Made by a program: the position numbers and the translations under genes. Positions 23,931 through 52,763 of a DNA stretch of 64,000 nt are shown here, piece after piece (the stretch's first letter is position 1; each line of letters starts with the position of its first letter). Under the pieces are notes generated by a model. The model was not told the DNA's origin. It saw nothing but the letters and a program-made list of their open reading frames with translations, and did no database searches. The stretch is from positions 186,001-250,000 of the IMG/VR virus record IMGVR_UViG_3300048121_001678; one strand, 5' to 3'.

Positions 23931-25661
23931 TTATCTTAAAGAGTTCATATCGAACGTTCTAACACCATCAACTGTAATAACACCATAGAAACGGTTATTA
24001 ACCATTTTCTTAGCGTATCTAGTCATGATACCCTTGATTGGTGTAAAGTTGAATGGGTTATACATAGTTGGTGTCAACTGTAATGGTACATATGGTGCGT
24101 AAACGTACCCTGTATCCAATAAAGAAGAACCTTTATGTCCCATCAATACAGTGTTAGGTGGGAAGTAAGGGTCACGGTAAACTTGATATCTACCTGATAA
24201 CGTACCTACTCTCTCAATACCCATGTTGTATTGGTCTTGGTCTGGTGCCGCATTTGATACGTGGAAGTATTCCAAGTCATCAAAGATTGCTGAAATTTCA
24301 GAAGAAACTACAATCCAGTTAGCACCACCTCTAAGAGTTGATTTGTGAATTTGAGCCGAGATTTGGTTAATTGCAGTAATCAACGTTTGGTTCCAGTCTT
24401 TTTGGTTATAGTTAACTGAACCATTAGATACTCTCTTCCATCCGTTGTAATCCCAACGTAATGACCAAGCTGCACCTTTTCTCAAGTCTCTTAAGATTTC
24501 ACGGTCAATCTCCGCTGCCACTTGCTCAGATAATAAAGCTGTTAATTCAGCTTCAGCATCGATGTTGTGGAACGCAGAAACGTCTTGTGCTAGTTCTGGA
24601 GACCATTGTGCTCTTAATTTTCTTTCTGTTACAGAAACAGTAACTGCTTCAAGGTCGAAAGAAACTTCACCAATTGCATCTTCAAATTCTAACGTTTTGT
24701 AGATTCTGTATGATGCGTCGAATTCAGGTGACGCTGCGTAAGTTGTACCTGAATAACCATCTAAAGAAGATGTACCAATACCAGCTACTACTGATGTATC
24801 TACAGATAAGTAGATAATACCTTCAGCATCACAGATATTGTCATATTTTCCACCAGGGAAGTTAGTTGATGCTTCAGCACCGTACTGAACAATACCTTTA
24901 CCATACTTCTGTGTTACCACATTGAAGTTGAAGTAATTAGCACCTGAATAAACTTCTAATGAAGCCAAGAATTCTTCAGTGTCCATTGCATTACCATCAG
25001 GACCGATTAGTTTACCTGCTCCGTCTCCTGAGAAACCTGACAACGCAACAATTACTGCTCTTGTTTCACCTGTGTAATCAGTTGATGTAGCCTCTACTAA
25101 AGTACTACCATCCCACTTATAGTTTACTAATGCTTTAGTAATTCCACTATACTGTCCTTTTGAATAATCAAATAGTCCAGCTGGGTCAGAATTTGGTGTT
25201 TCTCCTTCATAGAATTGGTCGTACAAGTTCTTTTGACCTGCAGTGTAACCTGTGTCTGTTGAAGAAGGACCTCCTGGTGCTCCGTAAGGTTTATAGTGTT
25301 CGCCATTGATTTGGTTAGCGTTCGCTTCTTGAATTTTAGGTACGAAGTAGAACAATTTACCGATTGGTAAGTTCATTGCTTGTACTGATACAATATCGTT
25401 AGCTAGTAATTTCGAGAATACTCTTCTAACGATAGGAAAGACTACAGTTTCAAATGAACCTGAGTCAGAAGCGTTTGCTGCTTCGTTAATTAAGTGAGAC
25501 GCTTGGTTTTCGTATAATTGTGCTACGTTTTCTCTCAAGTGACCTTTCAAGCCATCTAAGAAACCTAACTTGTCCCATTTGTTGATTGTGTCTTCTTTGA
25601 TAACTTTTAGGTGTTTTAACCCAATGTTACCTACAAGACCTGATTCTAATAATGCTCCCAT
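23931..25661 (-). CDS. major capsid protein (T4 gp23-like)
   Basis: VRRVF..L.ANDIVSVQAM, RKLRAQWSPELAQD, AEIDREI, YAPYVPL, GIMTRYA. Confidence 0.95.
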   Translation of the reverse strand: MGALLESGLVGNIGLKHLKVIKEDTINKWDKLGFLDGLKGHLRENVAQLYENQASHLINEAANASDSGSFETVVFPIVRRVFSKLLANDIVSVQAMNLPIGKLFYFVPKIQEANANQINGEHYKPYGAPGGPSSTDTGYTAGQKNLYDQFYEGETPNSDPAGLFDYSKGQYSGITKALVNYKWDGSTLVEATSTDYTGETRAVIVALSGFSGDGAGKLIGPDGNAMDTEEFLASLEVYSGANYFNFNVVTQKYGKGIVQYGAEASTNFPGGKYDNICDAEGIIYLSVDTSVVAGIGTSSLDGYSGTTYAASPEFDASYRIYKTLEFEDAIGEVSFDLEAVTVSVTERKLRAQWSPELAQDVSAFHNIDAEAELTALLSEQVAAEIDREILRDLRKGAAWSLRWDYNGWKRVSNGSVNYNQKDWNQTLITAINQISAQIHKSTLRGGANWIVVSSEISAIFDDLEYFHVSNAAPDQDQYNMGIERVGTLSGRYQVYRDPYFPPNTVLMGHKGSSLLDTGYVYAPYVPLQLTPTMYNPFNFTPIKGIMTRYAKKMVNNRFYGVITVDGVRTFDMNSLR

Positions 25662-30121: not shown

Positions 30122-31996
30122 TTATTTAAGTAAGTTGTTTAATTTTTCTTCCATCTCACCTAATGAATCTCTACCTTTTGATAGGTCAATAGTCTCATCT
30201 TGACCGAACAATGTCGAATCTTCTAAGATTAAATCTAAGTCTTTATTTTTAACAAATGTCTCAGGTGCTAATTCGGGTTCACTACCAGTACCTACTTCAC
30301 CAGCGGGTTCACCACCTAAATCGCCACCTAAATCGCCACCTAAATCGCCACCGAAGTCACTACCCCCACCGAAGTCACCTCCACCACCAAAGTCGTCTCC
30401 TCCTTCAGTATCAGATTCACCTTCAGGTTTAGCATCTTTCTGTCCATATAGTTTGTCAAGGTTATCAAAGATACCTGTATTGACAATAACTTCTTGAGTT
30501 TTTTCTAACTCACCTGCGACCGCCCTTTCGATACGTTGTTGTTGTAGGTCAAGTTTGATTTCCTCATCAGAGAACCCAAGAATATGTTTCTTAGCCCATG
30601 ATGATGAAACAGGAAGGATACCATTACCTGGGTCAGTAGTTGCATCTCTATATAACTGAATCTTCTGTTGCCATTGTTCCACCTTCAACAAGTCCGCTTG
30701 TGACGATGGATTAGTTAAACCTAATGTGAAGTTTTGTAATTCATCTTCAAATCCTAAAATATATAAATGAATTATTGCTATCTTATTTAACTCTTGTACC
30801 ATAGACCTTTGTACTCTATTAATAGTTCGAGCGAAACGAATATCTTGTAGAGCCAAGTTCTTACCTTCACCTGTGACCTCCTCAAAACCTAAGAATGCCT
30901 TTGGTACTCTTAATGCTGTGAGTAATTTCTTTTGAATATACTCTATATCCGCAATTTCTGATAGGTTTGTAGCACCTGGTAAGGTATCTATCGGATTTGG
31001 AGAGTTAGGGTCTCTAACAGGTATAAAATAGTCTTGGTCTACGGCCATTTGGTTCATACGTAGGTCGACATTACCTGTTTGAGGGTCAGCAACTTGGTCA
31101 CGTTTGAACTTATTGGCAACTCTTTGTACATACGGTTCGACATCTTTGTCATCCATATTACCAACAAATACTTTAAACACCCTTCTTTCAGGTGCCCTAG
31201 ATGTTCTATATATTAACATAGCATCTTCAGAGAGAATAAGTTGTTTCCATATTCTTCTGGCTTTTTCCAACATAGAAGTCCCATAAGGAAGTTTACGGTC
31301 ATCACCCAATAATCTAAAGTGGGCAATTTCCCACGTATTGAATTCCATATCCTTAGCCTTCCATTTGAATTTTAACGCATCTTCGTCAGCATCTCCTGTT
31401 GGTTGTTGAATACCATATTGACCAGGTGAGGATTTCATTCCTCTTTCCAATCTTTCGATTTCAATGTTAGGTAATTGTTGTCCACCCACAATACCTTTTT
31501 CAGGGTCCAATTTCAAGTATACAAAGTTATCACCGTACTTAGCGGTGTTTCTTGTCCACATCGGTAAGTTAGTGTCTATATCTAATCTATTATTAAATAA
31601 ATCTGTTAGTACCGATTTAATTCTTTTACTCTCGGAAAAAACTTGTAATATGTAACCGTCTTCGTTAGCTGTTGTTGATTCCTCAGCGTATATATCAAGA
31701 GCCGCAGAAATTTCAGGTGTGAACTCCATACTCTCATAATCGTAAAACGCTGCCAGTCTTGTTGGTTCATAATATACCGCCTGAGTATATAAGTTATTTT
31801 CAACTTTTTGCCATTGTTGACCTAAGTATAGTGTTTGTTGTGCTTCAAGTTTTTCTCTATCATACTCCTCCTTATCACGTGTTTTTAATAATTCTTTCTT
31901 ATCAAAATTGTAAACAGGTGGCTGTTGGTCCAATGTTGAATCGGGACCAAATACTTTGGTTAATCTCTGCCAAACAGTAAAGTTATTTTCTGCCAT
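30122..31996 (-). CDS. portal protein (T4 gp20-like)
   Basis: EDAMLIYRTSRAPERRVF, DYFIP, IDTLPG, DIEYIQKKL..ALRVP. Confidence 0.93.
   Translation of the reverse strand: MAENNFTVWQRLTKVFGPDSTLDQQPPVYNFDKKELLKTRDKEEYDREKLEAQQTLYLGQQWQKVENNLYTQAVYYEPTRLAAFYDYESMEFTPEISAALDIYAEESTTANEDGYILQVFSESKRIKSVLTDLFNNRLDIDTNLPMWTRNTAKYGDNFVYLKLDPEKGIVGGQQLPNIEIERLERGMKSSPGQYGIQQPTGDADEDALKFKWKAKDMEFNTWEIAHFRLLGDDRKLPYGTSMLEKARRIWKQLILSEDAMLIYRTSRAPERRVFKVFVGNMDDKDVEPYVQRVANKFKRDQVADPQTGNVDLRMNQMAVDQDYFIPVRDPNSPNPIDTLPGATNLSEIADIEYIQKKLLTALRVPKAFLGFEEVTGEGKNLALQDIRFARTINRVQRSMVQELNKIAIIHLYILGFEDELQNFTLGLTNPSSQADLLKVEQWQQKIQLYRDATTDPGNGILPVSSSWAKKHILGFSDEEIKLDLQQQRIERAVAGELEKTQEVIVNTGIFDNLDKLYGQKDAKPEGESDTEGGDDFGGGGDFGGGSDFGGDLGGDLGGDLGGEPAGEVGTGSEPELAPETFVKNKDLDLILEDSTLFGQDETIDLSKGRDSLGEMEEKLNNLLK
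30312..30347. repeat. 12-bp tandem repeat x3 (GGDL) in the portal C-terminus
   Basis: CCACCTAAATCG x3 followed by degenerate GGDF copies. Confidence 0.85.
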
Positions 31997-32045: not shown

Positions 32046-33821
32046 TTATCTTCTACTTCCGAATAACCATAAATAGTTTTCATAATCACTTTTCGTTGCG
32101 TTACCTGTACGACCATTTCTATAGGGGTCATTTGGTAATGCCGACAGAGAAGGATTATAATTATCTACAGGGTTAGTTACCGGTGTTTCTTGCACATACC
32201 AACTATCAACCATTGCTTTAGTTTGTTCAGTCACTTTCTCTAAAGAAGTAAATGAATTTTCACCTACATATATCGCCATGGCCATTGCCATAATCAAATC
32301 ATCATGTTGTCCTTTTATGTGGTCAGGTCTACCGTTAACATAAACAAACGTATTTAATTCATTTAAAAGTCTTGTTGAACGAACCTTATAATCATGTCTT
32401 AAAGATTCCTCAAAGGAGGCAACAATTTGTACACGTTTACTATTGAAATTTAAACCAGGTATCTTTTCCATAGCCTTAGGGTTGTATTTCCATTTGTCCG
32501 CAGCATTCACACCTTCTACATATAAGTTTTGATACCCCATCTCTTGGAGTTTTCGGGACGTTGATACTCCCATACCTCCCGTAATATCAATAACCACAAA
32601 CGCATTATACATAGTTGCCCATTTAAATGCGATTTCAGCTGCAACATCAGGTGGTATTTTCCCTAAATACTCTAAAACTTGCTCCCTTTCATCAAAATCA
32701 ATAATACAAAACGTTGTGAAATCCTCACTGTCACCACGAGAAACGTCTATACCCATTATGTACTTATGATTAGCAATAGGTTCTTTCCATTGCCATAGTG
32801 AACCACCCATAAACTTATTCTCTGGCGGCATAATATGGTTTTCTTTTAACTTTTCAATAGTTTCATTAGGAATTACATTGTCACCTGAACCTAAAAAGTT
32901 ACACTCAAGCTCCTGAGAAATTTTTCTACGGTCAAACTTAAGTTTTTTAGCCATAGACTCAAACCAGCTGGAGTATGGTTTATATCCCTTATCAAAATGA
33001 TTTTTAATTTCTTCAAAATCTCTTTGTCTAGGGTCTATATGTGTATAATCAATAATAATTTCACTATCGTTATAGTCATCACGATTTAACATATAGTGTA
33101 TAATGTCCTTACACTTTATTAATTGTAAGTTTTTGGCGTATCTAGGGTCTTTATACCAATACATGTCGGTAATCTTAAAGTCATTCATCCCCCTTAATGC
33201 TTGGTCATAAATCGCATAATATATACGGTCAAAACCGTTAGGTGTTGATATTACGATTACTTTACCACCAGTAGATAGTGAAGCCATACATGCAGACCAA
33301 AAGTCATCATCGGCCTCAATAAACGCAGCTTCATCAAAAATAAGAATAGTAGGGGTATACCCACGCAGAGCATCTTTAGAAGTTGCAACCGCTTTAACCT
33401 CACATCCATTATTTAACTTAAAGTGTCTTTGTGAATTTTTTTCATTTGAAAATTTAACCCCTAACCAATCAGGCCATTGGTCAACAAAAGAACGTATCTT
33501 ATTTGCAAATTCCATAGACGTATCTAATTTATTTGCAATGATTAGTATCTTTTCTGGTTTACTCTTTTTAGCAGTAACTAATTTTTTAGACGACCAAGCT
33601 GCGGTAACTGTTGATACACCTGCTTGACGATATTTGATTGCGATATTTTCTTCAAAATTATCATAATCAAAAATTAACTTGTCTTGGTCAGGAAAAAGTT
33701 CGAGTGGTACGTAACGAGATTGTGTGTTGTCGTATGTTTGTAAGTATGTCTTTAATGCATATGACGTATCCTTAACTATTTTCGCGTATTCTACTAATGC
33801 TTTTTCTCTCGTTAAACCCAT
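32046..33821 (-). CDS. terminase large subunit (T4 gp17-like)
   Basis: KYRQAGVST, ILIFDEAAF, ISTPNG, QELEC.F.GS, GIDVSRG, HDDLIMA. Confidence 0.93.
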   Translation of the reverse strand: MGLTREKALVEYAKIVKDTSYALKTYLQTYDNTQSRYVPLELFPDQDKLIFDYDNFEENIAIKYRQAGVSTVTAAWSSKKLVTAKKSKPEKILIIANKLDTSMEFANKIRSFVDQWPDWLGVKFSNEKNSQRHFKLNNGCEVKAVATSKDALRGYTPTILIFDEAAFIEADDDFWSACMASLSTGGKVIVISTPNGFDRIYYAIYDQALRGMNDFKITDMYWYKDPRYAKNLQLIKCKDIIHYMLNRDDYNDSEIIIDYTHIDPRQRDFEEIKNHFDKGYKPYSSWFESMAKKLKFDRRKISQELECNFLGSGDNVIPNETIEKLKENHIMPPENKFMGGSLWQWKEPIANHKYIMGIDVSRGDSEDFTTFCIIDFDEREQVLEYLGKIPPDVAAEIAFKWATMYNAFVVIDITGGMGVSTSRKLQEMGYQNLYVEGVNAADKWKYNPKAMEKIPGLNFNSKRVQIVASFEESLRHDYKVRSTRLLNELNTFVYVNGRPDHIKGQHDDLIMAMAMAIYVGENSFTSLEKVTEQTKAMVDSWYVQETPVTNPVDNYNPSLSALPNDPYRNGRTGNATKSDYENYLWLFGSRR

Positions 33822-40130: not shown

Positions 40131-42146
40131 ATGATAGAATCAGTTGACCCGAACGATAGTTCAAAAGGAAAGAAAGATAGATTACCTAAGTCTGGTACAC
40201 CAGTATTAGACAACTTTTCACGTGATTTAATTAAACATGCAGAACAAGGTAAGTTAGACCCTGTTGTTGGTCGTGACCGTGAAATTGAGCGTATTGCACA
40301 AATCCTCTCTCGTAGAAAGAAAAATAACCCTATTATCATTGGTGAACCAGGTTGTGGTAAGACAGCAATCATTGAGGGATTGGCCATGAAAATATATGAA
40401 GGTGATTGTCCTCGTAATTTATCAGATAAACGTATCGTGTCCTTAGATATGACATCAATCGTTGCAGGTACAAAGTATCGTGGACAATTTGAGGAACGTC
40501 TAAAGGTAATCTTAGATGAGTTATACGATAATCCAGATATCATTGTATTCATTGATGAAATACATACTATCATCGGAGCCGGTAACTCATCAGGTTCCTT
40601 AGATGCCTCAAATATCTTTAAACCGGCACTTGCACGTGGTGAACTACAATGTGTTGGTGCAACTACACTCGATGAGTATCGTGAAAATATTGAAAAAGAT
40701 GGAGCGTTAGAACGTCGTTTTCAGAAGGTTATGGTTGATGGGGCATCACCTGAAGAAACAATGATTATCTTACAGAATCTTAAATCACGTTACGAATCAC
40801 ATCATAAGGTATCTTACTCAGATGACTCTTTAGAAGCGTGTGTGTACTTAGCTGACCGTTACATTACTGACAGAGCATTTCCAGATAAAGCAATCGATAT
40901 TTTAGATGAGGTTGGTGCTCGTAGTCAAATCTCCGTGAAATTACCTGAAGAAATTGAAAAACTTAAAGACGAGGCAAATGTCATTAAATTGGAGAAAATC
41001 GATGTAGTTAAAGCACAGGACTATGAGAAAGCAGCACACCTTAGAGATAAGGAAAAGAAAATCCTTAAAGAATTGGATAAAGTTAAAATTGAGTTTGAAA
41101 ATAAGCAAGATGAGGAACGTAAACCAATTACTGAAGATATGGTATATGAAGTTGTCGCAAATATGACTAAAATACCTGTATCTAAACTTAATCAAAACGA
41201 AATGGAAGGATTGTTAGATTTAGAAAACAACCTTAATCAAACGGTAATTGGTCAAGAACCTGCAGTTAAGAAGATTTCTAAAGCAATACGTAGAAACCGT
41301 GTCGGTATTAAAGACCCAAGTCGCCCAATCGGTTCATTCATCTTCTTAGGTTCCACAGGTGTAGGTAAAACACACTTAGCTAAAAAATTGGCAAAAGAAA
41401 TTTTTGGAGATGAAGAGGCACTGATTAGAGTAGATATGTCTGAATACCAAGAAAAGTATACGATGTCACGTCTTATTGGTTCCCCTCCAGGTTATGTAGG
41501 TCATCAAGAAGGTGGACAACTAACTGAGAAAGTTAAAAATAAACCATATTCAGTAGTACTGTTTGATGAGATTGAAAAGGCAAATAAAGACATCTTCTCA
41601 CTTCTATTACAAGTTTTAGATGACGGTCACCTAACCGATAGTTTCGGTCGTAAAATCAACTTCAAAAACTGTTTAATTATTATGACATCAAACTTAGGTG
41701 TTAAGAAACTACAGGATTTCGGTGCAGGTGTTGGGTTTGACACAACTGCAAGAATTAGTGGTGACGAGGACCTTAAAAAGGCTCTTTTACAAAAAGAACT
41801 TAAGAATCACTTCACACCTGAATTCTTAAATCGATTAGATGAAGTAATTGTGTTCAACCCACTAAAAGAAAACGAAGTACGTCAGATTGTAGATATTGAG
41901 TTATCAAAACTAAATCAACGTTTAGAGAGGCTTGGGTATCACATTAACTTTACTGATGAAATTAAAACCATGTTAGGTGAAGTAGGTTATGATGAGAAAT
42001 ATGGGGCAAGACCAATCAAAAGAGCTATCCAAGAAAAGATTGAGGATTACATCTCTGAGGAAGTACTACGTCAAAATATCAAAATCGGACGTAACTACGA
42101 ACTTAAGTTTGTAGATGAAGAAGTGAAAATTGAGGAGGGGGGTTAA
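40131..42146 (+). CDS. clpC: ClpC-type AAA+ unfoldase lacking the N-domain
   Basis: GEPGCGKT/FIDEIH, UVR-like M-domain, GSTGVGKT/LFDEIEKA, GVGF ClpP-docking loop; TATATTTG at 40094. Confidence 0.9.
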   Translation: MIESVDPNDSSKGKKDRLPKSGTPVLDNFSRDLIKHAEQGKLDPVVGRDREIERIAQILSRRKKNNPIIIGEPGCGKTAIIEGLAMKIYEGDCPRNLSDKRIVSLDMTSIVAGTKYRGQFEERLKVILDELYDNPDIIVFIDEIHTIIGAGNSSGSLDASNIFKPALARGELQCVGATTLDEYRENIEKDGALERRFQKVMVDGASPEETMIILQNLKSRYESHHKVSYSDDSLEACVYLADRYITDRAFPDKAIDILDEVGARSQISVKLPEEIEKLKDEANVIKLEKIDVVKAQDYEKAAHLRDKEKKILKELDKVKIEFENKQDEERKPITEDMVYEVVANMTKIPVSKLNQNEMEGLLDLENNLNQTVIGQEPAVKKISKAIRRNRVGIKDPSRPIGSFIFLGSTGVGKTHLAKKLAKEIFGDEEALIRVDMSEYQEKYTMSRLIGSPPGYVGHQEGGQLTEKVKNKPYSVVLFDEIEKANKDIFSLLLQVLDDGHLTDSFGRKINFKNCLIIMTSNLGVKKLQDFGAGVGFDTTARISGDEDLKKALLQKELKNHFTPEFLNRLDEVIVFNPLKENEVRQIVDIELSKLNQRLERLGYHINFTDEIKTMLGEVGYDEKYGARPIKRAIQEKIEDYISEEVLRQNIKIGRNYELKFVDEEVKIEEGG

Positions 42147-47305: not shown

Positions 47306-48373
47306 TTAATCAAATGCTGGACAAAGTGTTTGACTTGGTCTACGTCGTTTAGATTTGTTTTTGGATTTTTTAATCCATGTATATAATGGTATTTTAATAG
47401 ATATACCTTTAGTTCTTCTCTGGAATGTAACTTTATATAGTTTGGTTGTCAGTGTTTCTTCACCCCCGTCTTTCCCTGGTGATGGAGGTTTATTTAGAAC
47501 AACCTGAATATCAACATTTAAATATTTATAAGGTTCATATTTAGACTTATCAGAGCCTTTTTTCCATTCAGGTCCTGATGTTCCATCACCATTTTGACCT
47601 TTATAGTTTTGAGTGATTACCGTATTTGAATCAGTTATAACACCTAAGGAGTTTAATTGAGATTCTATATATTTTAATGCACTATCATTCCTTAATTTAG
47701 ATAACTCCTTAAACGTATATGTTTTACCGTCAGGAGATTGAGTATTAGGTATTCTCGATGCCGAAGTATCAACATTTAAATTTTTTAAGTACATTTTAGG
47801 TTTACCCTCTAAGCTCTTCATTGATTCTAATTGAGTTTTAATTGGGTCAATAACATCTTTTTTAAATTGCTCTTTAAAATATGGTGTAGTTTCATAGTAA
47901 TTATCGACAAAGAAATCTGAAGAAGGTGAATTATTCGCTGGAAAAACTACTGGTAACGAAGGATACACTTTAGGTTCTCCAGGTACTTTTTCAGTTCTTT
48001 CACCCGCATTACTACAGTACACTCTATTCCATTTATTTTCCGGATAAGTTTCGTTGAATGACTCAACCGTTGCCACCGCTAAATCTATTTGATTTTTCTT
48101 AATTTCTTCCCACTTAGTTCGACTTGTTTTTGTCATCAGAGAAACCATTACATTCGCCTCAGGTCCGTTAACAAACTCTTCCCATTGTTCTTCTGAAAGT
48201 TCTGGTTGTACATTACCTTGTTTTAATGTTTTTTTATCTTTAGTTTTGGATTTAATAATTTGAACACGCTTAGTTCCCACACGTCTCAATTGTTCATTAT
48301 ACTCTTGTTCTTCAAGTACCTTTCTAACCATATTCTCCAAATCAGATTCAGATATTTTTACTACTTTCCTCAT
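47306..48373 (-). CDS. hypothetical late protein with VKISESDL leader, possibly OmpA-C-like domain
   Basis: ATG at 48373; VDTSASRIPN...LSKLRNDSALKYI. Confidence 0.6.
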   Translation of the reverse strand: MRKVVKISESDLENMVRKVLEEQEYNEQLRRVGTKRVQIIKSKTKDKKTLKQGNVQPELSEEQWEEFVNGPEANVMVSLMTKTSRTKWEEIKKNQIDLAVATVESFNETYPENKWNRVYCSNAGERTEKVPGEPKVYPSLPVVFPANNSPSSDFFVDNYYETTPYFKEQFKKDVIDPIKTQLESMKSLEGKPKMYLKNLNVDTSASRIPNTQSPDGKTYTFKELSKLRNDSALKYIESQLNSLGVITDSNTVITQNYKGQNGDGTSGPEWKKGSDKSKYEPYKYLNVDIQVVLNKPPSPGKDGGEETLTTKLYKVTFQRRTKGISIKIPLYTWIKKSKNKSKRRRPSQTLCPAFD

Positions 48374-48401: not shown

Positions 48402-48458
48402 TTTGTTATTAGAAAAAAAGTATTTATATTTGTACTCAGAAACAAAAGTTCTTTGAAA
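48402..48458 (+). promoter_or_regulatory. tmRNA promoter plus boxA-like element
   Basis: TTTG-N19-TATATTTG followed by GTTCTTTGAAA. Confidence 0.7.
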
Positions 48459-48462
48459 TTAT

Positions 48463-48852
48463 GGGGGTGAATGGAATTGATTGGCAGGGTCAGTTGCACG
48501 GGGCACGTAGTGAGATGTTATCTATCACTTTAATCTATGATGGCAATTTTGTAATCGGCGAAACTTTCGCAAAACTTCAGGCAGTAGGTCTCCTACGTAC
48601 TGAAGAAGTAGCTGTAGCGTAAGACGTTAACAGTGAATCGGGTCGGTCAGGACATGTACCTATGAACAGAAGTCCGTTGTTGTGGTGGAAAAACGATTAA
48701 ACCCTAAATTGAGTCGTACATCTATTGGTGATAGAGGATGTAAAAATTCAATCACATATTTCGGAACATTGTGAACTAATGTTGACCTAAACGTGTAGTC
48801 CTTTGTAGGTGGACTGAACAAGACGCGGGTTCGAATCCCGCCACCTCCACCA
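48463..48852 (+). ncRNA. ssrA: tmRNA
   Basis: 5' GGGGGTG pairs with CACCTCC-ACCA 3' (G3.U wobble); T-arm GCGGGTTCGAATCCCGC; internal tag ORF 48557-48622. Confidence 0.93.
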
Positions 48853-48859
48853 AAGCTAA

Positions 48860-48894
48860 GGTCCAATAGAGTTTATCTATTGGACTTTTTTTTT
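48860..48894 (+). terminator. terminator after tmRNA
   Basis: GTCCAATAGA-GTTTA-TCTATTGGAC followed by a T run. Confidence 0.8.
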
Positions 48895-48925
48895 ATAAAC
48901 TATATGTTATTACAAAACAAAACTT

Positions 48926-49183
48926 ATGAAATTACCTATAATTAAAAAGATTGTAGAATCAGGTGAATTTGATGAGGATTACTTAGATGAGACAATTGAA
49001 GTTCTTCTTTGTATTTCAGAATCAAGAGGACTTAAAGATGAGGAAATGGATGTCATCGGTGAACTTATCTCAAATATCTCAGGAGCCCAAGAGGTGATGA
49101 AAGATATAAAAGACGGTACATCACAACGTGATGCACTGAACGGTTTCATGAAACGAGTTACTAATAGTGTAACGTTTAATTAA
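48926..49183 (+). CDS. Bacteroidota conserved protein (DUF6952-like)
   Basis: MKLPIIK...DED..ETIE.L...LKDEEMDVIGELISN..GA.EV...ALNGFMKRV. Confidence 0.6.
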   Translation: MKLPIIKKIVESGEFDEDYLDETIEVLLCISESRGLKDEEMDVIGELISNISGAQEVMKDIKDGTSQRDALNGFMKRVTNSVTFN

Positions 49184-49580: not shown

Positions 49581-50330
49581 ATGACAGTAACAGGAATCAA
49601 CATCACAGAAAAAGTAAGAGACTACAAAGGAAACAATTCATTCATCAAGAACCTGAAGCCAGGTCTTTCAAAGTACGGGAGACTAACTCCTAAGCAATTC
49701 GCAGCTGCTGAGAAAATCATCTTAAACGAAGTACGTAGTTCTGAAGTGAAGGTTGAGGACCTACCACAATCTATTCAAGATATCGTAAACTACGGTGGTG
49801 AGTTGAAGTTCGTAAAAGACATTCAGTCTAAATATAACAAATATCGTCGTCTTACTGAGAAGCAAGTATCTGCAGCGACTAAAGCAATCAGCCGTGAAAA
49901 AGCTAAAAAGTCACAGAAAGAAATCAATGTTGACATCGTTGGTAACACTATCAAACTTGGACGTAACATCGCTTTGGATATCAAAGACACATACAACTTA
50001 GAGTTCCAACCAATCTTAGTTGACGTTACTAAAGTCATGACAGTATCTGAAAAGGCAGTGAAGATAGAGGCTAAACTAACAAAAGAAAACGGTGGTATCT
50101 GTCGTTGTTGTGGTAGAACACTTACTGATGATATGTCTAAAATGACAGGTATCGGTCCTGTATGTTCACGTAACGTGGGGGTTAAACACCCGACATCTCG
50201 AGAAGACCTACCTAAGTACCAACAGATGATTTCTGACAAAATCGACGAAATAGGAACATTTGAGTTCTGGATTCCAAAAAGAGGAATCGTCGAGTGGAAC
50301 GGTCACGGAGCAGTATTATTAAAGCTCTAA
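49581..50330 (+). CDS. DUF6011-like Zn-finger protein
   Basis: CRCCGRTLTD..S...GIGPVC; duplicated F...I...Y..LT.KQ motif; TATATTTG at 49531. Confidence 0.7.
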   Translation: MTVTGINITEKVRDYKGNNSFIKNLKPGLSKYGRLTPKQFAAAEKIILNEVRSSEVKVEDLPQSIQDIVNYGGELKFVKDIQSKYNKYRRLTEKQVSAATKAISREKAKKSQKEINVDIVGNTIKLGRNIALDIKDTYNLEFQPILVDVTKVMTVSEKAVKIEAKLTKENGGICRCCGRTLTDDMSKMTGIGPVCSRNVGVKHPTSREDLPKYQQMISDKIDEIGTFEFWIPKRGIVEWNGHGAVLLKL

Positions 50331-52271: not shown

Positions 52272-52763
52272 ATGAATGTAGTATTAGTCCTAAACTCAGA
52301 CTTTACACCACACAACGTAACAACATTACGAAGAGGTTTTGTATTAGTGGAAAAAGGTAAAGCTGAGATATTGAAAAAAGGTGATGATATAATAACAACA
52401 TCAGGTAACTTTGTTAGACCCTTAGTTATTCGATTAGTTAATTATGTTAGATATCGAGCAAGGAACTTAGGTGTGAACCGTAAACGACTATTTAAAAGAG
52501 ATAGATACCAATGTGGTTATTGTGGTTCTAAAAATAATTTAACAATCGACCATATAATTCCTAAATCCAGAGGGGGGTTAAATACTTGGGATAATTTGGT
52601 GACATCATGTTTTAGATGTAATAGTATTAAGGATAATAAAACACCTTCAGAAGCGGGAATGAGATTAAGGATTAAACCTTATACACCCACATTATTCTCA
52701 CGTGTTATCGACGATACTGTTGAGTCAATATGGGAATCATTTAAAAAAGAAGTGTTTAAATAA
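52272..52763 (+). CDS. HNH endonuclease (McrA-like)
   Basis: RD.YQCGYCG..LTIDHIIPKSRGG...W.NLVTSC..CN..K. Confidence 0.9.
   Translation: MNVVLVLNSDFTPHNVTTLRRGFVLVEKGKAEILKKGDDIITTSGNFVRPLVIRLVNYVRYRARNLGVNRKRLFKRDRYQCGYCGSKNNLTIDHIIPKSRGGLNTWDNLVTSCFRCNSIKDNKTPSEAGMRLRIKPYTPTLFSRVIDDTVESIWESFKKEVFK

What the first reader, a model, noticed from the sequence alone, without database searches (positions are those of the whole stretch)
48463..48852. Phage tmRNA with an unusually long, non-canonical degradation tag
Seen: the tag frame 48557-48622 reads (A)GETFAKLQAVGLLRTEEVAVA*, 21 codons. The gene has a host-type promoter, a boxA-like leader and an encoded CCA. Known: Bacteroidota tags are short (GExxYALAA-like), and the C-terminal LAA is the ClpX degron. 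Here the host-like GE start is kept, but the end is VAVA with a long insert. Inference: rescued peptides are routed differently, either to the phage's own ClpC system about 6 kb away or away from host ClpXP. This could counter ribosome-stalling defences such as tRNA/mRNA nucleases. The resume codon is inferred.
Basis: partly seen in the sequence, partly recalled or inferred. Interest (0 to 1): 0.65.

Follow-up and report, generated by a model that had tools for sequence, protein, structure and literature searches.

The report
Jumbo-phage tmRNA with long conserved tag
An uncultured 297-kb phage, probably of freshwater Flavobacteriales, carries its own ribosome-rescue RNA (tmRNA) whose peptide tag is twice as long as its hosts' tags and is conserved across the phage clade; it is a new example of a known but functionally unstudied class of phage genes.

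Summary
Window 48463-48852 (+) is a full-length one-piece tmRNA, called by both ARAGORN and Rfam RF00023 (82.5 bits). It lies in a 297-kb IMG/VR jumbo-phage genome. The resume codon is GGC 48557-48559. This is fixed by the Rfam alignment, by the U(-5)/A(-4) frame-setting motif, and by 20 distinct relatives that all keep exactly 21 codons in this frame.

The tag core LQAVGL[LIV]RTEEV changes only synonymously or conservatively, so the tag is almost certainly translated. The same codons also form a conserved hairpin. In 57 Flavobacteriales genomes read, the tags are 8-10 codons long and end in [LM]AA. The phage tag is therefore long and non-canonical for its host group.

It is not unprecedented. 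Mycobacteriophage Bxz1 has 25 codons, and a second Flavobacteriales-phage lineage has 35. The VAVA end is a minority variant; relatives end in YAA or TVA. Promoter (TAnnTTTG) and leader (TTCTTTGA) are host ssrA-type.

The phage does encode an N-domain-less ClpC with a VGF loop, and a ClpP. However, the 35-codon lineage has neither. Routing to the phage's own Clp system remains untested and is somewhat disfavoured. Verdict: a real, new member of a known kind, of moderate interest.

The parts
48402..48405 (+). -33-like TTTG element of a Bacteroidota-type promoter
   Evidence: Read. It lies 19 nt before the TAnnTTTG element. The consensus is taken from my own knowledge of Bacteroides/Flavobacterium promoters. 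Function is inferred.
48425..48432 (+). -7 TAnnTTTG promoter element (TATATTTG)
   Evidence: Present 27-38 nt upstream of the mature 5' end in 18 of 22 distinct phage relatives. Present within 50 nt upstream of 20 of 33 host ssrA genes.
48448..48462 (+). Conserved 5' leader GTTCTTTGAAATTAT, presumably removed by RNase P
   Evidence: GTT(C/A)TTTGA is kept in all 22 distinct relatives. TTCTTT lies within 24 nt upstream of 20 of 33 Flavobacteriales ssrA genes, against 1 in a control window and 1.4 in shuffles.
48463..48852 (+). tmRNA (ssrA) gene, one-piece, 390 nt
   Evidence: ARAGORN. Rfam RF00023 at 82.5 bits, full length. Homologues found in 12 of 44 TerL-related contigs and 29 IMG/VR contigs.
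48463..48469 (+). Acceptor stem 5' strand GGGGGUG, including G3 of the G3:U70 alanine identity pair
   Evidence: Pairs with 48842-48848. The GGGGGUG form is shared by both phage lineages, whereas hosts have GGGGYYG.
48552..48556 (+). Frame-setting upstream sequence UAAUC (U-5, A-4)
   Evidence: A at -4 in all 19 distinct upstream sequences listed, and U at -5 in all but the CAAAC type. This corresponds to E. coli U85/A86 (PMC2481249).
48557..48622 (+). Tag reading frame: resume codon GGC, 21 sense codons, TAA stop
   Evidence: Length is invariant in 20 distinct variants. Variable sites by codon position are 5/4/14. The other two frames carry stops in 9 and 12 of the 12 relatives.
48575..48605 (+). 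Hairpin inside the tag ORF (codons 7-17): outer stem CUUCAG/CUGAAG, inner stem GUAGG/CCUAC
   Evidence: All 20 variants fold it (-9.9 to -14.2 kcal/mol, z -1.8 to -4.7). The outer-stem codons are invariant even at synonymous sites. The inner stem is kept in alternative registers.
48611..48634 (+). Helix 5, with the stop codon at the loop
   Evidence: One pair covaries UA<->CG between the TVA/AVA-type and YAA-type relatives.
48825..48841 (+). T-arm of the tRNA-like domain
   Evidence: Rfam alignment with posterior probability at the maximum. The stem-loop is also listed.
48842..48852 (+). Acceptor 3' strand CACCUCC, discriminator A and encoded CCA
   Evidence: CCA is not encoded in the L083/L085-type relatives.
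48858..48897 (+). Intrinsic terminator-like hairpin plus T-run
   Evidence: 13 pairs, 3 terminator-like sites found against 0.4 expected.
40131..42146 (+). ClpC-like double-AAA+ unfoldase without the N-terminal domain, with a VGF loop.
   Evidence: phrog_4871 at 813 bits. AAA_2, AAA_lid_9 and ClpB_D2-small domains. Aligns to S. aureus ClpC residues 151-792 at 763 bits. Lies 5-7 kb upstream of the tmRNA in the 14 relatives whose locus reached far enough upstream for a ClpC match.
48926..49183 (+). DUF6952 gene directly downstream. Used as a host clue, not part of the tmRNA.
   Evidence: PF22264 at 87.7 bits. Homologues at 52-77% identity, mostly in Crocinitomicaceae and Cryomorphaceae MAGs. Present beside the tmRNA in only some relatives. 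Not beside ssrA in hosts.

Best explanation
This is a functional, phage-maintained one-piece tmRNA. It descends from a Flavobacteriales GENNYALAA-type ssrA gene and is inherited vertically in a widespread clade of uncultured jumbo phages.

Proposed mechanism (the steps below are inferred from established tmRNA biology, not shown here):
- It is transcribed from a host-type TTTG/TAnnTTTG promoter.
- It is trimmed at a host-type ssrA leader.
- It is charged with alanine through its G3:U70 pair.
- It is delivered to stalled ribosomes by host SmpB, since the phage has no smpB.
- Translation resumes at GGC 48557 and adds Ala plus 21 residues.

The role is most likely to keep, or raise, ribosome-rescue capacity during a long jumbo-phage infection.

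Compared with host tags, the tag has gained about 12 codons. These codons carry two constraints at once: a conserved peptide core, LQAVGL[LIV]RTEEV, and an RNA hairpin within the coding region. The small hydrophobic C-terminus ([YTA][AV]A) most likely still marks products for an AAA+ protease. The conserved core most likely acts as a second recognition handle for an adaptor or protease. Which protease reads the tag is not known.
For: Shown:
- Full-length tmRNA called by two methods.
- It sits among phage capsid, portal and terminase genes in a 99%-complete virus record.
- Homologues occupy the same synteny in related contigs.
- All 20 distinct variants keep exactly 21 codons.
- In the 12 relatives found without reference to the tag, variable sites by codon position are 5/4/14. 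Eight codons change only synonymously, and core codons 7-18 change only synonymously or L/I/V.
- A(-4) is conserved, which sets the frame.
- Helix 5 covaries.
- The ORF hairpin folds in every variant.
- The promoter and leader motifs match host ssrA genes.
- There is no SmpB in the phage.
- The three candidate host-group genomes tested (two Crocinitomicaceae and Lishizhenia) have ClpX.
- No close copy was found in the 401 Bacteroidia genomes searched.

Inferred: the G3:U70 pair and the T-arm are intact, from which alanine charging is inferred.
Against: - There is no expression or tagging data.
- The host is inferred only from one neighbouring gene and from promoter and leader motifs.
- The nucleotide invariance of codons 7-8 and 15-16 could come from RNA structure alone, so part of the apparent peptide conservation is confounded with structure.
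- 17 of the 29 pattern-found contigs were selected with a pattern that fixes part of the core. Only the 12 relatives found with RF00023 are unbiased.
- Whether the tag is a degron at all is untested.
Confidence: 0.6

Rival explanations
1. The long tag is a private degron that routes rescued peptides to the phage's own ClpC-ClpP, or away from host ClpXP.
For: - The phage encodes a ClpC homologue with a VGF ClpP-docking loop.
- It encodes a ClpP with Ser/His/Asp motifs.
- ClpC lies 5-7 kb upstream of the tmRNA in the 14 relatives whose locus reached far enough upstream for a ClpC match.
- The host [LM]AA end is lost in the window's variant.
- There is a precedent for a tag co-evolving with a different protease: Mesoplasma mf-SsrA and Lon (PMC9382460).
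Against: - A second phage lineage has a 35-codon tag sharing the ...LLR[NT]E(E)V..A end, yet its 100%-complete genome has neither ClpC nor ClpP.
- Conserved synteny within one collinear clade is not independent evidence.
- 18 of the 42 contigs end in YAA, which keeps the AA-COOH end that ClpX reads.
- The ClpC lacks the N-domain that known adaptors use.
- No binding test was possible.
Confidence: 0.18
2. The tag is not a degradation signal. The RNA serves mainly to release ribosomes, or to compete with host tmRNA or SmpB. The long tag is then neutral, stabilising, or has another peptide function.
For: - The last three residues vary (AVA, TVA, YAA), unlike the invariant host [LM]AA.
- Ribosome release, not tagging, is the essential tmRNA activity in model bacteria (my own knowledge).
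- A TLD-only phage tmRNA that may titrate SmpB is on record for phage DS6A (PMC4131195).
Against: - Strong purifying selection on the peptide core and on the exact length argues that the peptide matters.
- All variants keep a small or hydrophobic C-terminus ending in Ala, as degrons of this class do.
Confidence: 0.12
3. The conserved element is primarily an RNA structure, for example one that protects the long coding region from nucleases or serves as a protein-binding hairpin. On this view the peptide conservation is a by-product.
For: - The outer-stem codons (CUU CAG ... ACU GAA) are invariant even at synonymous sites.
- The hairpin folds in all 20 variants, with z scores down to -4.7.
- The inner stem is kept by alternative registers.
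Against: - Loop and inner-stem codons 9-14 change freely at third positions while the amino acids stay the same.
- Codons 1-6 and 18-21 lie outside the hairpin yet keep frame and length.
- Structure alone does not explain the 5/4/14 bias by codon position.
Confidence: 0.1

Closest known systems
One-piece tmRNA (ssrA, RF00023) of Flavobacteriales hosts
   Same: Shared features are the overall architecture, the Gly resume codon with a GE start, the UAAxx upstream motif, the TAnnTTTG promoter, the TTCTTTGA leader, and the G3:U70 pair.
   Different: - Only about 42-45% nucleotide identity.
- Lower Rfam score: 72-99 bits against 110-181.
- Acceptor GGGGGUG instead of GGGGYYG.
- Tag of 21 codons instead of 8-10.
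- No [LM]AA end in the window's variant.
- An extra hairpin inside the ORF.
tmRNAs of cultured phages: mycobacteriophage Bxz1 group and Bacillus phage G (tmRNA Website; PMC4131195)
   Same: These are full-length tmRNAs in large lytic phages without smpB reported beside them. Their tags differ from the hosts': Bxz1 has 25 codons ending ALV, and phage G has 13 codons ending QVA.
   Different: - The host phylum and phage clade are different, and there is no sequence relationship.
- Here the tag's conservation across about 20 variants, its dual coding and structural constraint, and its host-type leader are documented.
- The function is untested in all of these phages.
Mesoplasma/Mycoplasma long ssrA tag read by Lon (PMC9382460)
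   Same: It is a longer tag with a non-LAA end that co-evolved with a protease other than ClpXP. This provides a working model for how a divergent tag can switch protease.
   Different: There the cell lacks ClpXP. Here the three candidate host-group genomes tested have ClpX, and the reader of the tag is unknown.
Two-piece tmRNA of pelagimyophages and OM43 phage Melnitz (PMC9004378)
   Same: It is a complete phage-borne ssrA in aquatic myophages. The proposed roles are maintaining the translation machinery or tagging proteins. About 2.3% of phage genomes carry a tmRNA.
   Different: That tmRNA is permuted, two-piece and riboswitch-linked. The one here is one-piece, with its own promoter and terminator.

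Membership tests
tmRNA (RF00023) | tRNA-like domain: acceptor stem formed by the 5' and 3' ends, plus a T-arm | tested here: met
   The Rfam alignment covers model positions 1-374. Acceptor and T-arm columns have the highest posterior probability.
tmRNA (RF00023) | G3:U70 alanine identity pair and a 3' CCA | tested here: met
   G48465 pairs with U48846, and ACCA lies at 48849-48852. Actual charging is not testable here.
tmRNA (RF00023) | Internal ORF without a start codon, entered at a resume codon placed after PK1 and preceded by U-5/A-4 | tested here: met
   The model's resume codon aligns to GGC 48557-48559. U48552 and A48553 are present. A-4 is kept in all variants. Its role is described in PMC2481249.
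tmRNA (RF00023) | Stop codon in or at the loop of helix 5 | tested here: met
   Helix 5 spans 48611-48634 with UAA at 48620-48622. The helix covaries.
tmRNA (RF00023) | Pseudoknots PK2-PK4 between helix 5 and the TLD | tested here: inconclusive
   This region aligns with low posterior probability and with non-canonical pairs flagged. It was not modelled further.
tmRNA (RF00023) | Partner protein SmpB available | tested here: not met
   PF01668 was not found in the 99%-complete phage genome. Use of host SmpB is inferred, and host smpB was not searched for.
ClpX-type ssrA degron | C-terminal L/M-A-A-COOH | tested here: not met
   The window's tag ends A-V-A. Relatives end T-V-A or Y-A-A. The hosts read end [LM]AA in 57 of 57.
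ClpC (class I AAA+ unfoldase of a ClpCP protease); applies to the gene at 40131-42146 | Two AAA+ modules with a short middle domain and the D2-small domain | tested here: met
   Pfam hits are AAA, AAA_lid_9, AAA_2 and ClpB_D2-small, plus a weak UVR hit. It scores 763 bits against S. aureus ClpC.
ClpC (class I AAA+ unfoldase of a ClpCP protease); applies to the gene at 40131-42146 | N-terminal Clp_N domain that receives adaptors and phospho-arginine substrates | tested here: not met
   The protein starts at the position equivalent to residue ~151 of ClpC. There is no Clp_N hit.
ClpC (class I AAA+ unfoldase of a ClpCP protease); applies to the gene at 40131-42146 | ClpP-docking (I/V/L)GF loop in D2 | tested here: met
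   G-V-G-F-D sits at the position aligned to the A-G-F loop of S. aureus ClpC. Docking itself was not tested.

The most novel reading that the evidence does not exclude
Phages of Flavobacteriales carry a phage-specific tmRNA family. It is marked by the GGGGGUG acceptor and by 21-35-codon tags sharing an ...LLR[TN]E(E)V..A end. Under this reading the conserved tag core is a recognition handle for a fate set by the phage. In this clade that fate would be its own N-domain-less ClpC-ClpP. The result would be an orthogonal tagging-and-proteolysis circuit that handles ribosomes stalled by host nuclease defences.
Probability: 0.15. Interest if true: 0.75.

Novelty: new member of a known kind. Interest (0 to 1): 0.4.

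Why it matters
Phage-encoded tmRNAs have been catalogued for twenty years, yet in the literature I could search none has a tested function. This clade offers an unusually clean comparative case for four reasons. It has many natural variants. The tag peptide is demonstrably under selection. The host-type expression signals point to the host group. The same genome carries a complete ClpC-ClpP. Together these make one question directly testable with purified components and a Flavobacterium model: does a phage tmRNA re-address rescued proteins to a different protease?

Tried and rejected
- blastn of the tmRNA against 50,697 phage records gave no match.
- The neighbour gene at 47306-48373 was used as a probe for related loci and gave no relatives. 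My first coordinates for that gene were out of frame.
- TerL has no cultured relative above 30% identity.
- I tested whether DUF6952 and ssrA were captured together from a host. This is rejected, because there is no tmRNA beside DUF6952 in 61 host loci.
- I considered a prophage attP remnant of host ssrA. This is rejected, because the gene is full length, has its own promoter and terminator, and no close copy was found in the 401 Bacteroidia genomes searched.
- I considered an alternative resume codon. ARAGORN picks GCA (codon 5) in four relatives. That codon is in the same frame. It is rejected in favour of GGC because of the A-4 spacing, the Rfam alignment and the conservation of codons 1-4.
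- RNAalifold on the tag region recovered only the invariant outer stem, because the inner stem shifts register. Folding each sequence separately was needed.
- No other copy of the tag motif exists in the phage proteome.
- Searches for papers on the function of phage-encoded tmRNA found nothing specific.
- Complex prediction was not attempted, because the tag (22 residues) is below the 30-residue minimum.
- The large protein searches were not needed.
- No alternative genetic code was used.

Full report
**1. The observation**

ARAGORN finds a single tmRNA in the window, at 48463-48852 (+), with a 21-codon tag ending VAVA. Rfam RF00023 matches the same coordinates over the whole model (82.5 bits, gathering score 47). 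It places the model's resume codon on GGC 48557-48559, at the consensus distance after PK1.

Read directly from the sequence:
- The acceptor stem GGGGGUG/CACCUCC contains the G3:U70 pair.
- ACCA is encoded at 48849-48852.
- The stop codon TAA is at 48620-48622.

A 13-bp hairpin with a T-run follows at 48858-48897.

**2. Context**

The window is bases 186001-250000 of a 297,164-bp IMG/VR virus record, estimated 99% complete, with 34% G+C. It holds the major head protein (23931-25661), the portal (30122-31996) and the large terminase (32046-33821).

The terminase has 286 relatives in IMG/VR at 80-100% identity among the best 80. It has none above 30% identity among 50,697 deposited phage genomes. 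This is therefore a widespread, uncultured jumbo-phage clade.

The genome has five tRNAs and this one tmRNA, and no smpB.

**3. Relatives of the tmRNA and the reading frame**

RF00023 finds a tmRNA in 12 of 44 terminase-related contigs, 11 of them above the gathering score, wherever the contig reaches far enough. A pattern scan for the tag core finds 29 IMG/VR contigs. Together they give about 20 distinct versions.

All versions have exactly 21 sense codons in the same frame: G[EDN][TV][FIL][AEDN][KN]LQAVGL[LIV]RTEEV[YTA][AV]A.

The 12 relatives found with RF00023 form the unbiased set, because they were found without reference to the tag. In that set:
- Variable sites by codon position are 5, 4 and 14.
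- Eight codons vary only synonymously.
- Codons 7-18 show only synonymous or L/I/V changes.
- The other two frames contain stops in 9 and in 12 of the 12.
- By comparison, 224 of 402 alignment columns vary across the whole RNA.

Upstream of GGC, the A at -4 is kept in every variant and the U at -5 in all but one type. This is the U85/A86 element that sets the frame in E. coli (PMC2481249).

ARAGORN's alternative choice in four relatives is GCA, codon 5. It is in the same frame and would still give a 17-codon tag.

**4. A second constraint in the same codons**

Codons 7-17 (48575-48605) fold into a hairpin.
- Its outer stem, CUUCAG/CUGAAG, is invariant even at synonymous sites.
- Its inner stem is kept through alternative registers. 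These use different synonymous codons for Val10 and Arg14, and L/I/V at position 13.
- All 20 variants fold it, at -9.9 to -14.2 kcal/mol.

Helix 5 (48611-48634) carries the stop codon at its loop. It covaries UA<->CG between the TVA/AVA and YAA types.

The roughly 12 extra codons relative to host tags are therefore both a conserved peptide and a conserved RNA structure.

**5. Hosts**

The gene directly downstream (DUF6952, 48926-49183) has homologues at 52-77% identity, almost all in Flavobacteriales MAGs. They are mostly Crocinitomicaceae and Cryomorphaceae from lakes and rivers. None of those host loci has a tmRNA next to it.

In 151 Flavobacteriales genomes, 137 have RF00023 at 84-181 bits. 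I read 57 of these tags. Every one has 8-10 codons and ends [LM]AA, for example GENNYALAA, DNTSYALAA and GNNNYALAA.

The phage and host RNAs share only about 42-45% identity. In 401 Bacteroidia genomes searched, only two 29-nt T-arm matches turned up.

The expression signals, however, are host-type:
- TAnnTTTG lies 27-38 nt upstream in 18 of 22 phage versions, and within 50 nt upstream of 20 of 33 host genes.
- The phage leader GTTCTTTGAAA has its counterpart in hosts. TTCTTT lies within 24 nt upstream of the mature 5' end in 20 of 33 host ssrA genes, against 1 in a control window and 1.4 expected from shuffles.

The 'boxA-like leader' is therefore better described as a Flavobacteriales ssrA leader motif. 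Host ssrA genes carrying exactly TTCTTTGAAATAT have GENNYALAA tags. This fits the phage's GE(T) start.

**6. Is a long tag unusual?**

For the host group, yes. For phage tmRNAs, no.
- The Bxz1 tmRNA encodes 25 codons ending ALV.
- Bacillus phage G encodes 13 codons ending QVA. Both have been listed on the tmRNA Website since at least 2014 (PMC4131195).
- One low-scoring 'Flavobacteriales' tmRNA (83.9 bits, 360 nt) lies on a 4.9-kb contig with an endolysin and a holin. That contig is also an IMG/VR viral contig. Its tag has 35 codons and ends ...SLLRNEVLAAA.

That last tmRNA shares with the window's RNA both the LLR[TN]E(E)V..A motif and the GGGGGUG acceptor. Nine further IMG/VR contigs carry it.

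**7. The ClpC hypothesis**

Points in its favour:
- The gene at 40131-42146 aligns with S. aureus ClpC residues 151-792 (763 bits). It lacks the N-domain and has a VGF tripeptide at the ClpP-docking loop.
- A ClpP with Ser, His and Asp motifs lies at genome 275727-276386, outside the window.
- ClpC lies 5-7 kb upstream of the tmRNA in the 14 relatives whose locus reached far enough upstream for a ClpC match.

Points against it:
- That linkage is what vertical inheritance of a collinear genome predicts.
- The independent 35-codon lineage has neither ClpC nor ClpP in a 165,861-bp record rated 100% complete.
- The C-terminal three residues vary (TVA 22, YAA 18, AVA 2 contigs), while the internal core does not.
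- The three candidate host-group genomes tested have ClpX.

I therefore hold the private-degron model at about 0.18. I prefer the general reading: a phage-kept rescue RNA, with a tag whose core is a recognition element of unknown partner.

**8. Limits**

- The host assignment is indirect.
- Part of the peptide conservation is confounded with RNA structure.
- PK2-PK4 were not modelled.

Noticed in passing
Same phage genome, outside the window: L002:2753-3334 (-), about genome 277102-277683: A 193-aa ORF matches Pfam Bac_rhodopsin (PF01036, 53 bits, cut-off 24.6). It shows an RYLDW..TVP helix-C-like motif and a D..AK motif near the C-terminus. It is a short microbial-rhodopsin-like gene in a bacteriophage, one gene past the phage ClpP.
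   Followed up: partly
L243:3815-4174 (-), which is IMGVR_UViG_3300034064_000979, and loci L251-L260: A second phage tmRNA lineage: 360 nt, lying directly after a tRNA, with a 35-codon tag ending ...LLRNEVLAAA. It is nearly identical in 10 IMG/VR contigs. The same contig is also binned in a Flavobacteriales MAG. Its complete 166-kb genome lacks ClpC and ClpP.
   Followed up: yes
window 40131-42146 and L002:1378-2037: The phage encodes a ClpC lacking the adaptor-binding N-domain but keeping the VGF loop. It also encodes a separate ClpP about 41 kb away, beyond the window's end. This may be a complete phage ClpCP protease with unknown substrates.
   Followed up: partly
L219, L222, L223 and L233, the ~70 nt upstream of the tmRNA: In four relatives the TAnnTTTG promoter is replaced by a different conserved block (gctcccttaatagttaagg...cagggggcgaaagtgattt). 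It has no Rfam match. The nature of this block is unknown.
   Followed up: partly
Genome ends (G000 1-206 and 296959-297164): The first and last ~206 bases repeat each other, with at least one mismatch, although the record is classed 'linear'. This suggests a terminal repeat or a circularly closed assembly.
   Followed up: no
window 48926-49183: The DUF6952 gene, otherwise a Flavobacteriales chromosomal gene lying 3.4 kb from a tRNA-Leu(tag), sits beside the tmRNA in only some relatives. It looks like a recent host-derived insertion.
   Followed up: partly
L096 (JALQTD010000002.1, a 43.5-kb contig of a Flavobacteriales MAG): This is the best DUF6952 match (77%). It stands well above the other host hits (about 52-65%). 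The contig may itself be a related phage contig binned into a MAG.
   Followed up: no
window 52272-52763 and 49581-50330: An HNH endonuclease and a DUF6011 protein are conserved just downstream of the tmRNA in most relatives.
   Followed up: no
L085, L091, L093 and several host loci: ARAGORN missed or mis-framed tmRNA tags that Rfam detects. It made no call for 3 of the phage relatives, and gave wrong ORFs for host loci L158 and L199. Tag surveys that rely on ARAGORN alone will under-report such tags.
   Followed up: yes
L248 (LR756508.1, 92434-92880) and L250: The nearest deposited genome by terminase is a 484-kb uncultured huge phage. It also has a tmRNA (72 bits) and a second partial hit (58 bits). 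ARAGORN's tag call there (8 codons ending SW) looks unreliable.
   Followed up: no
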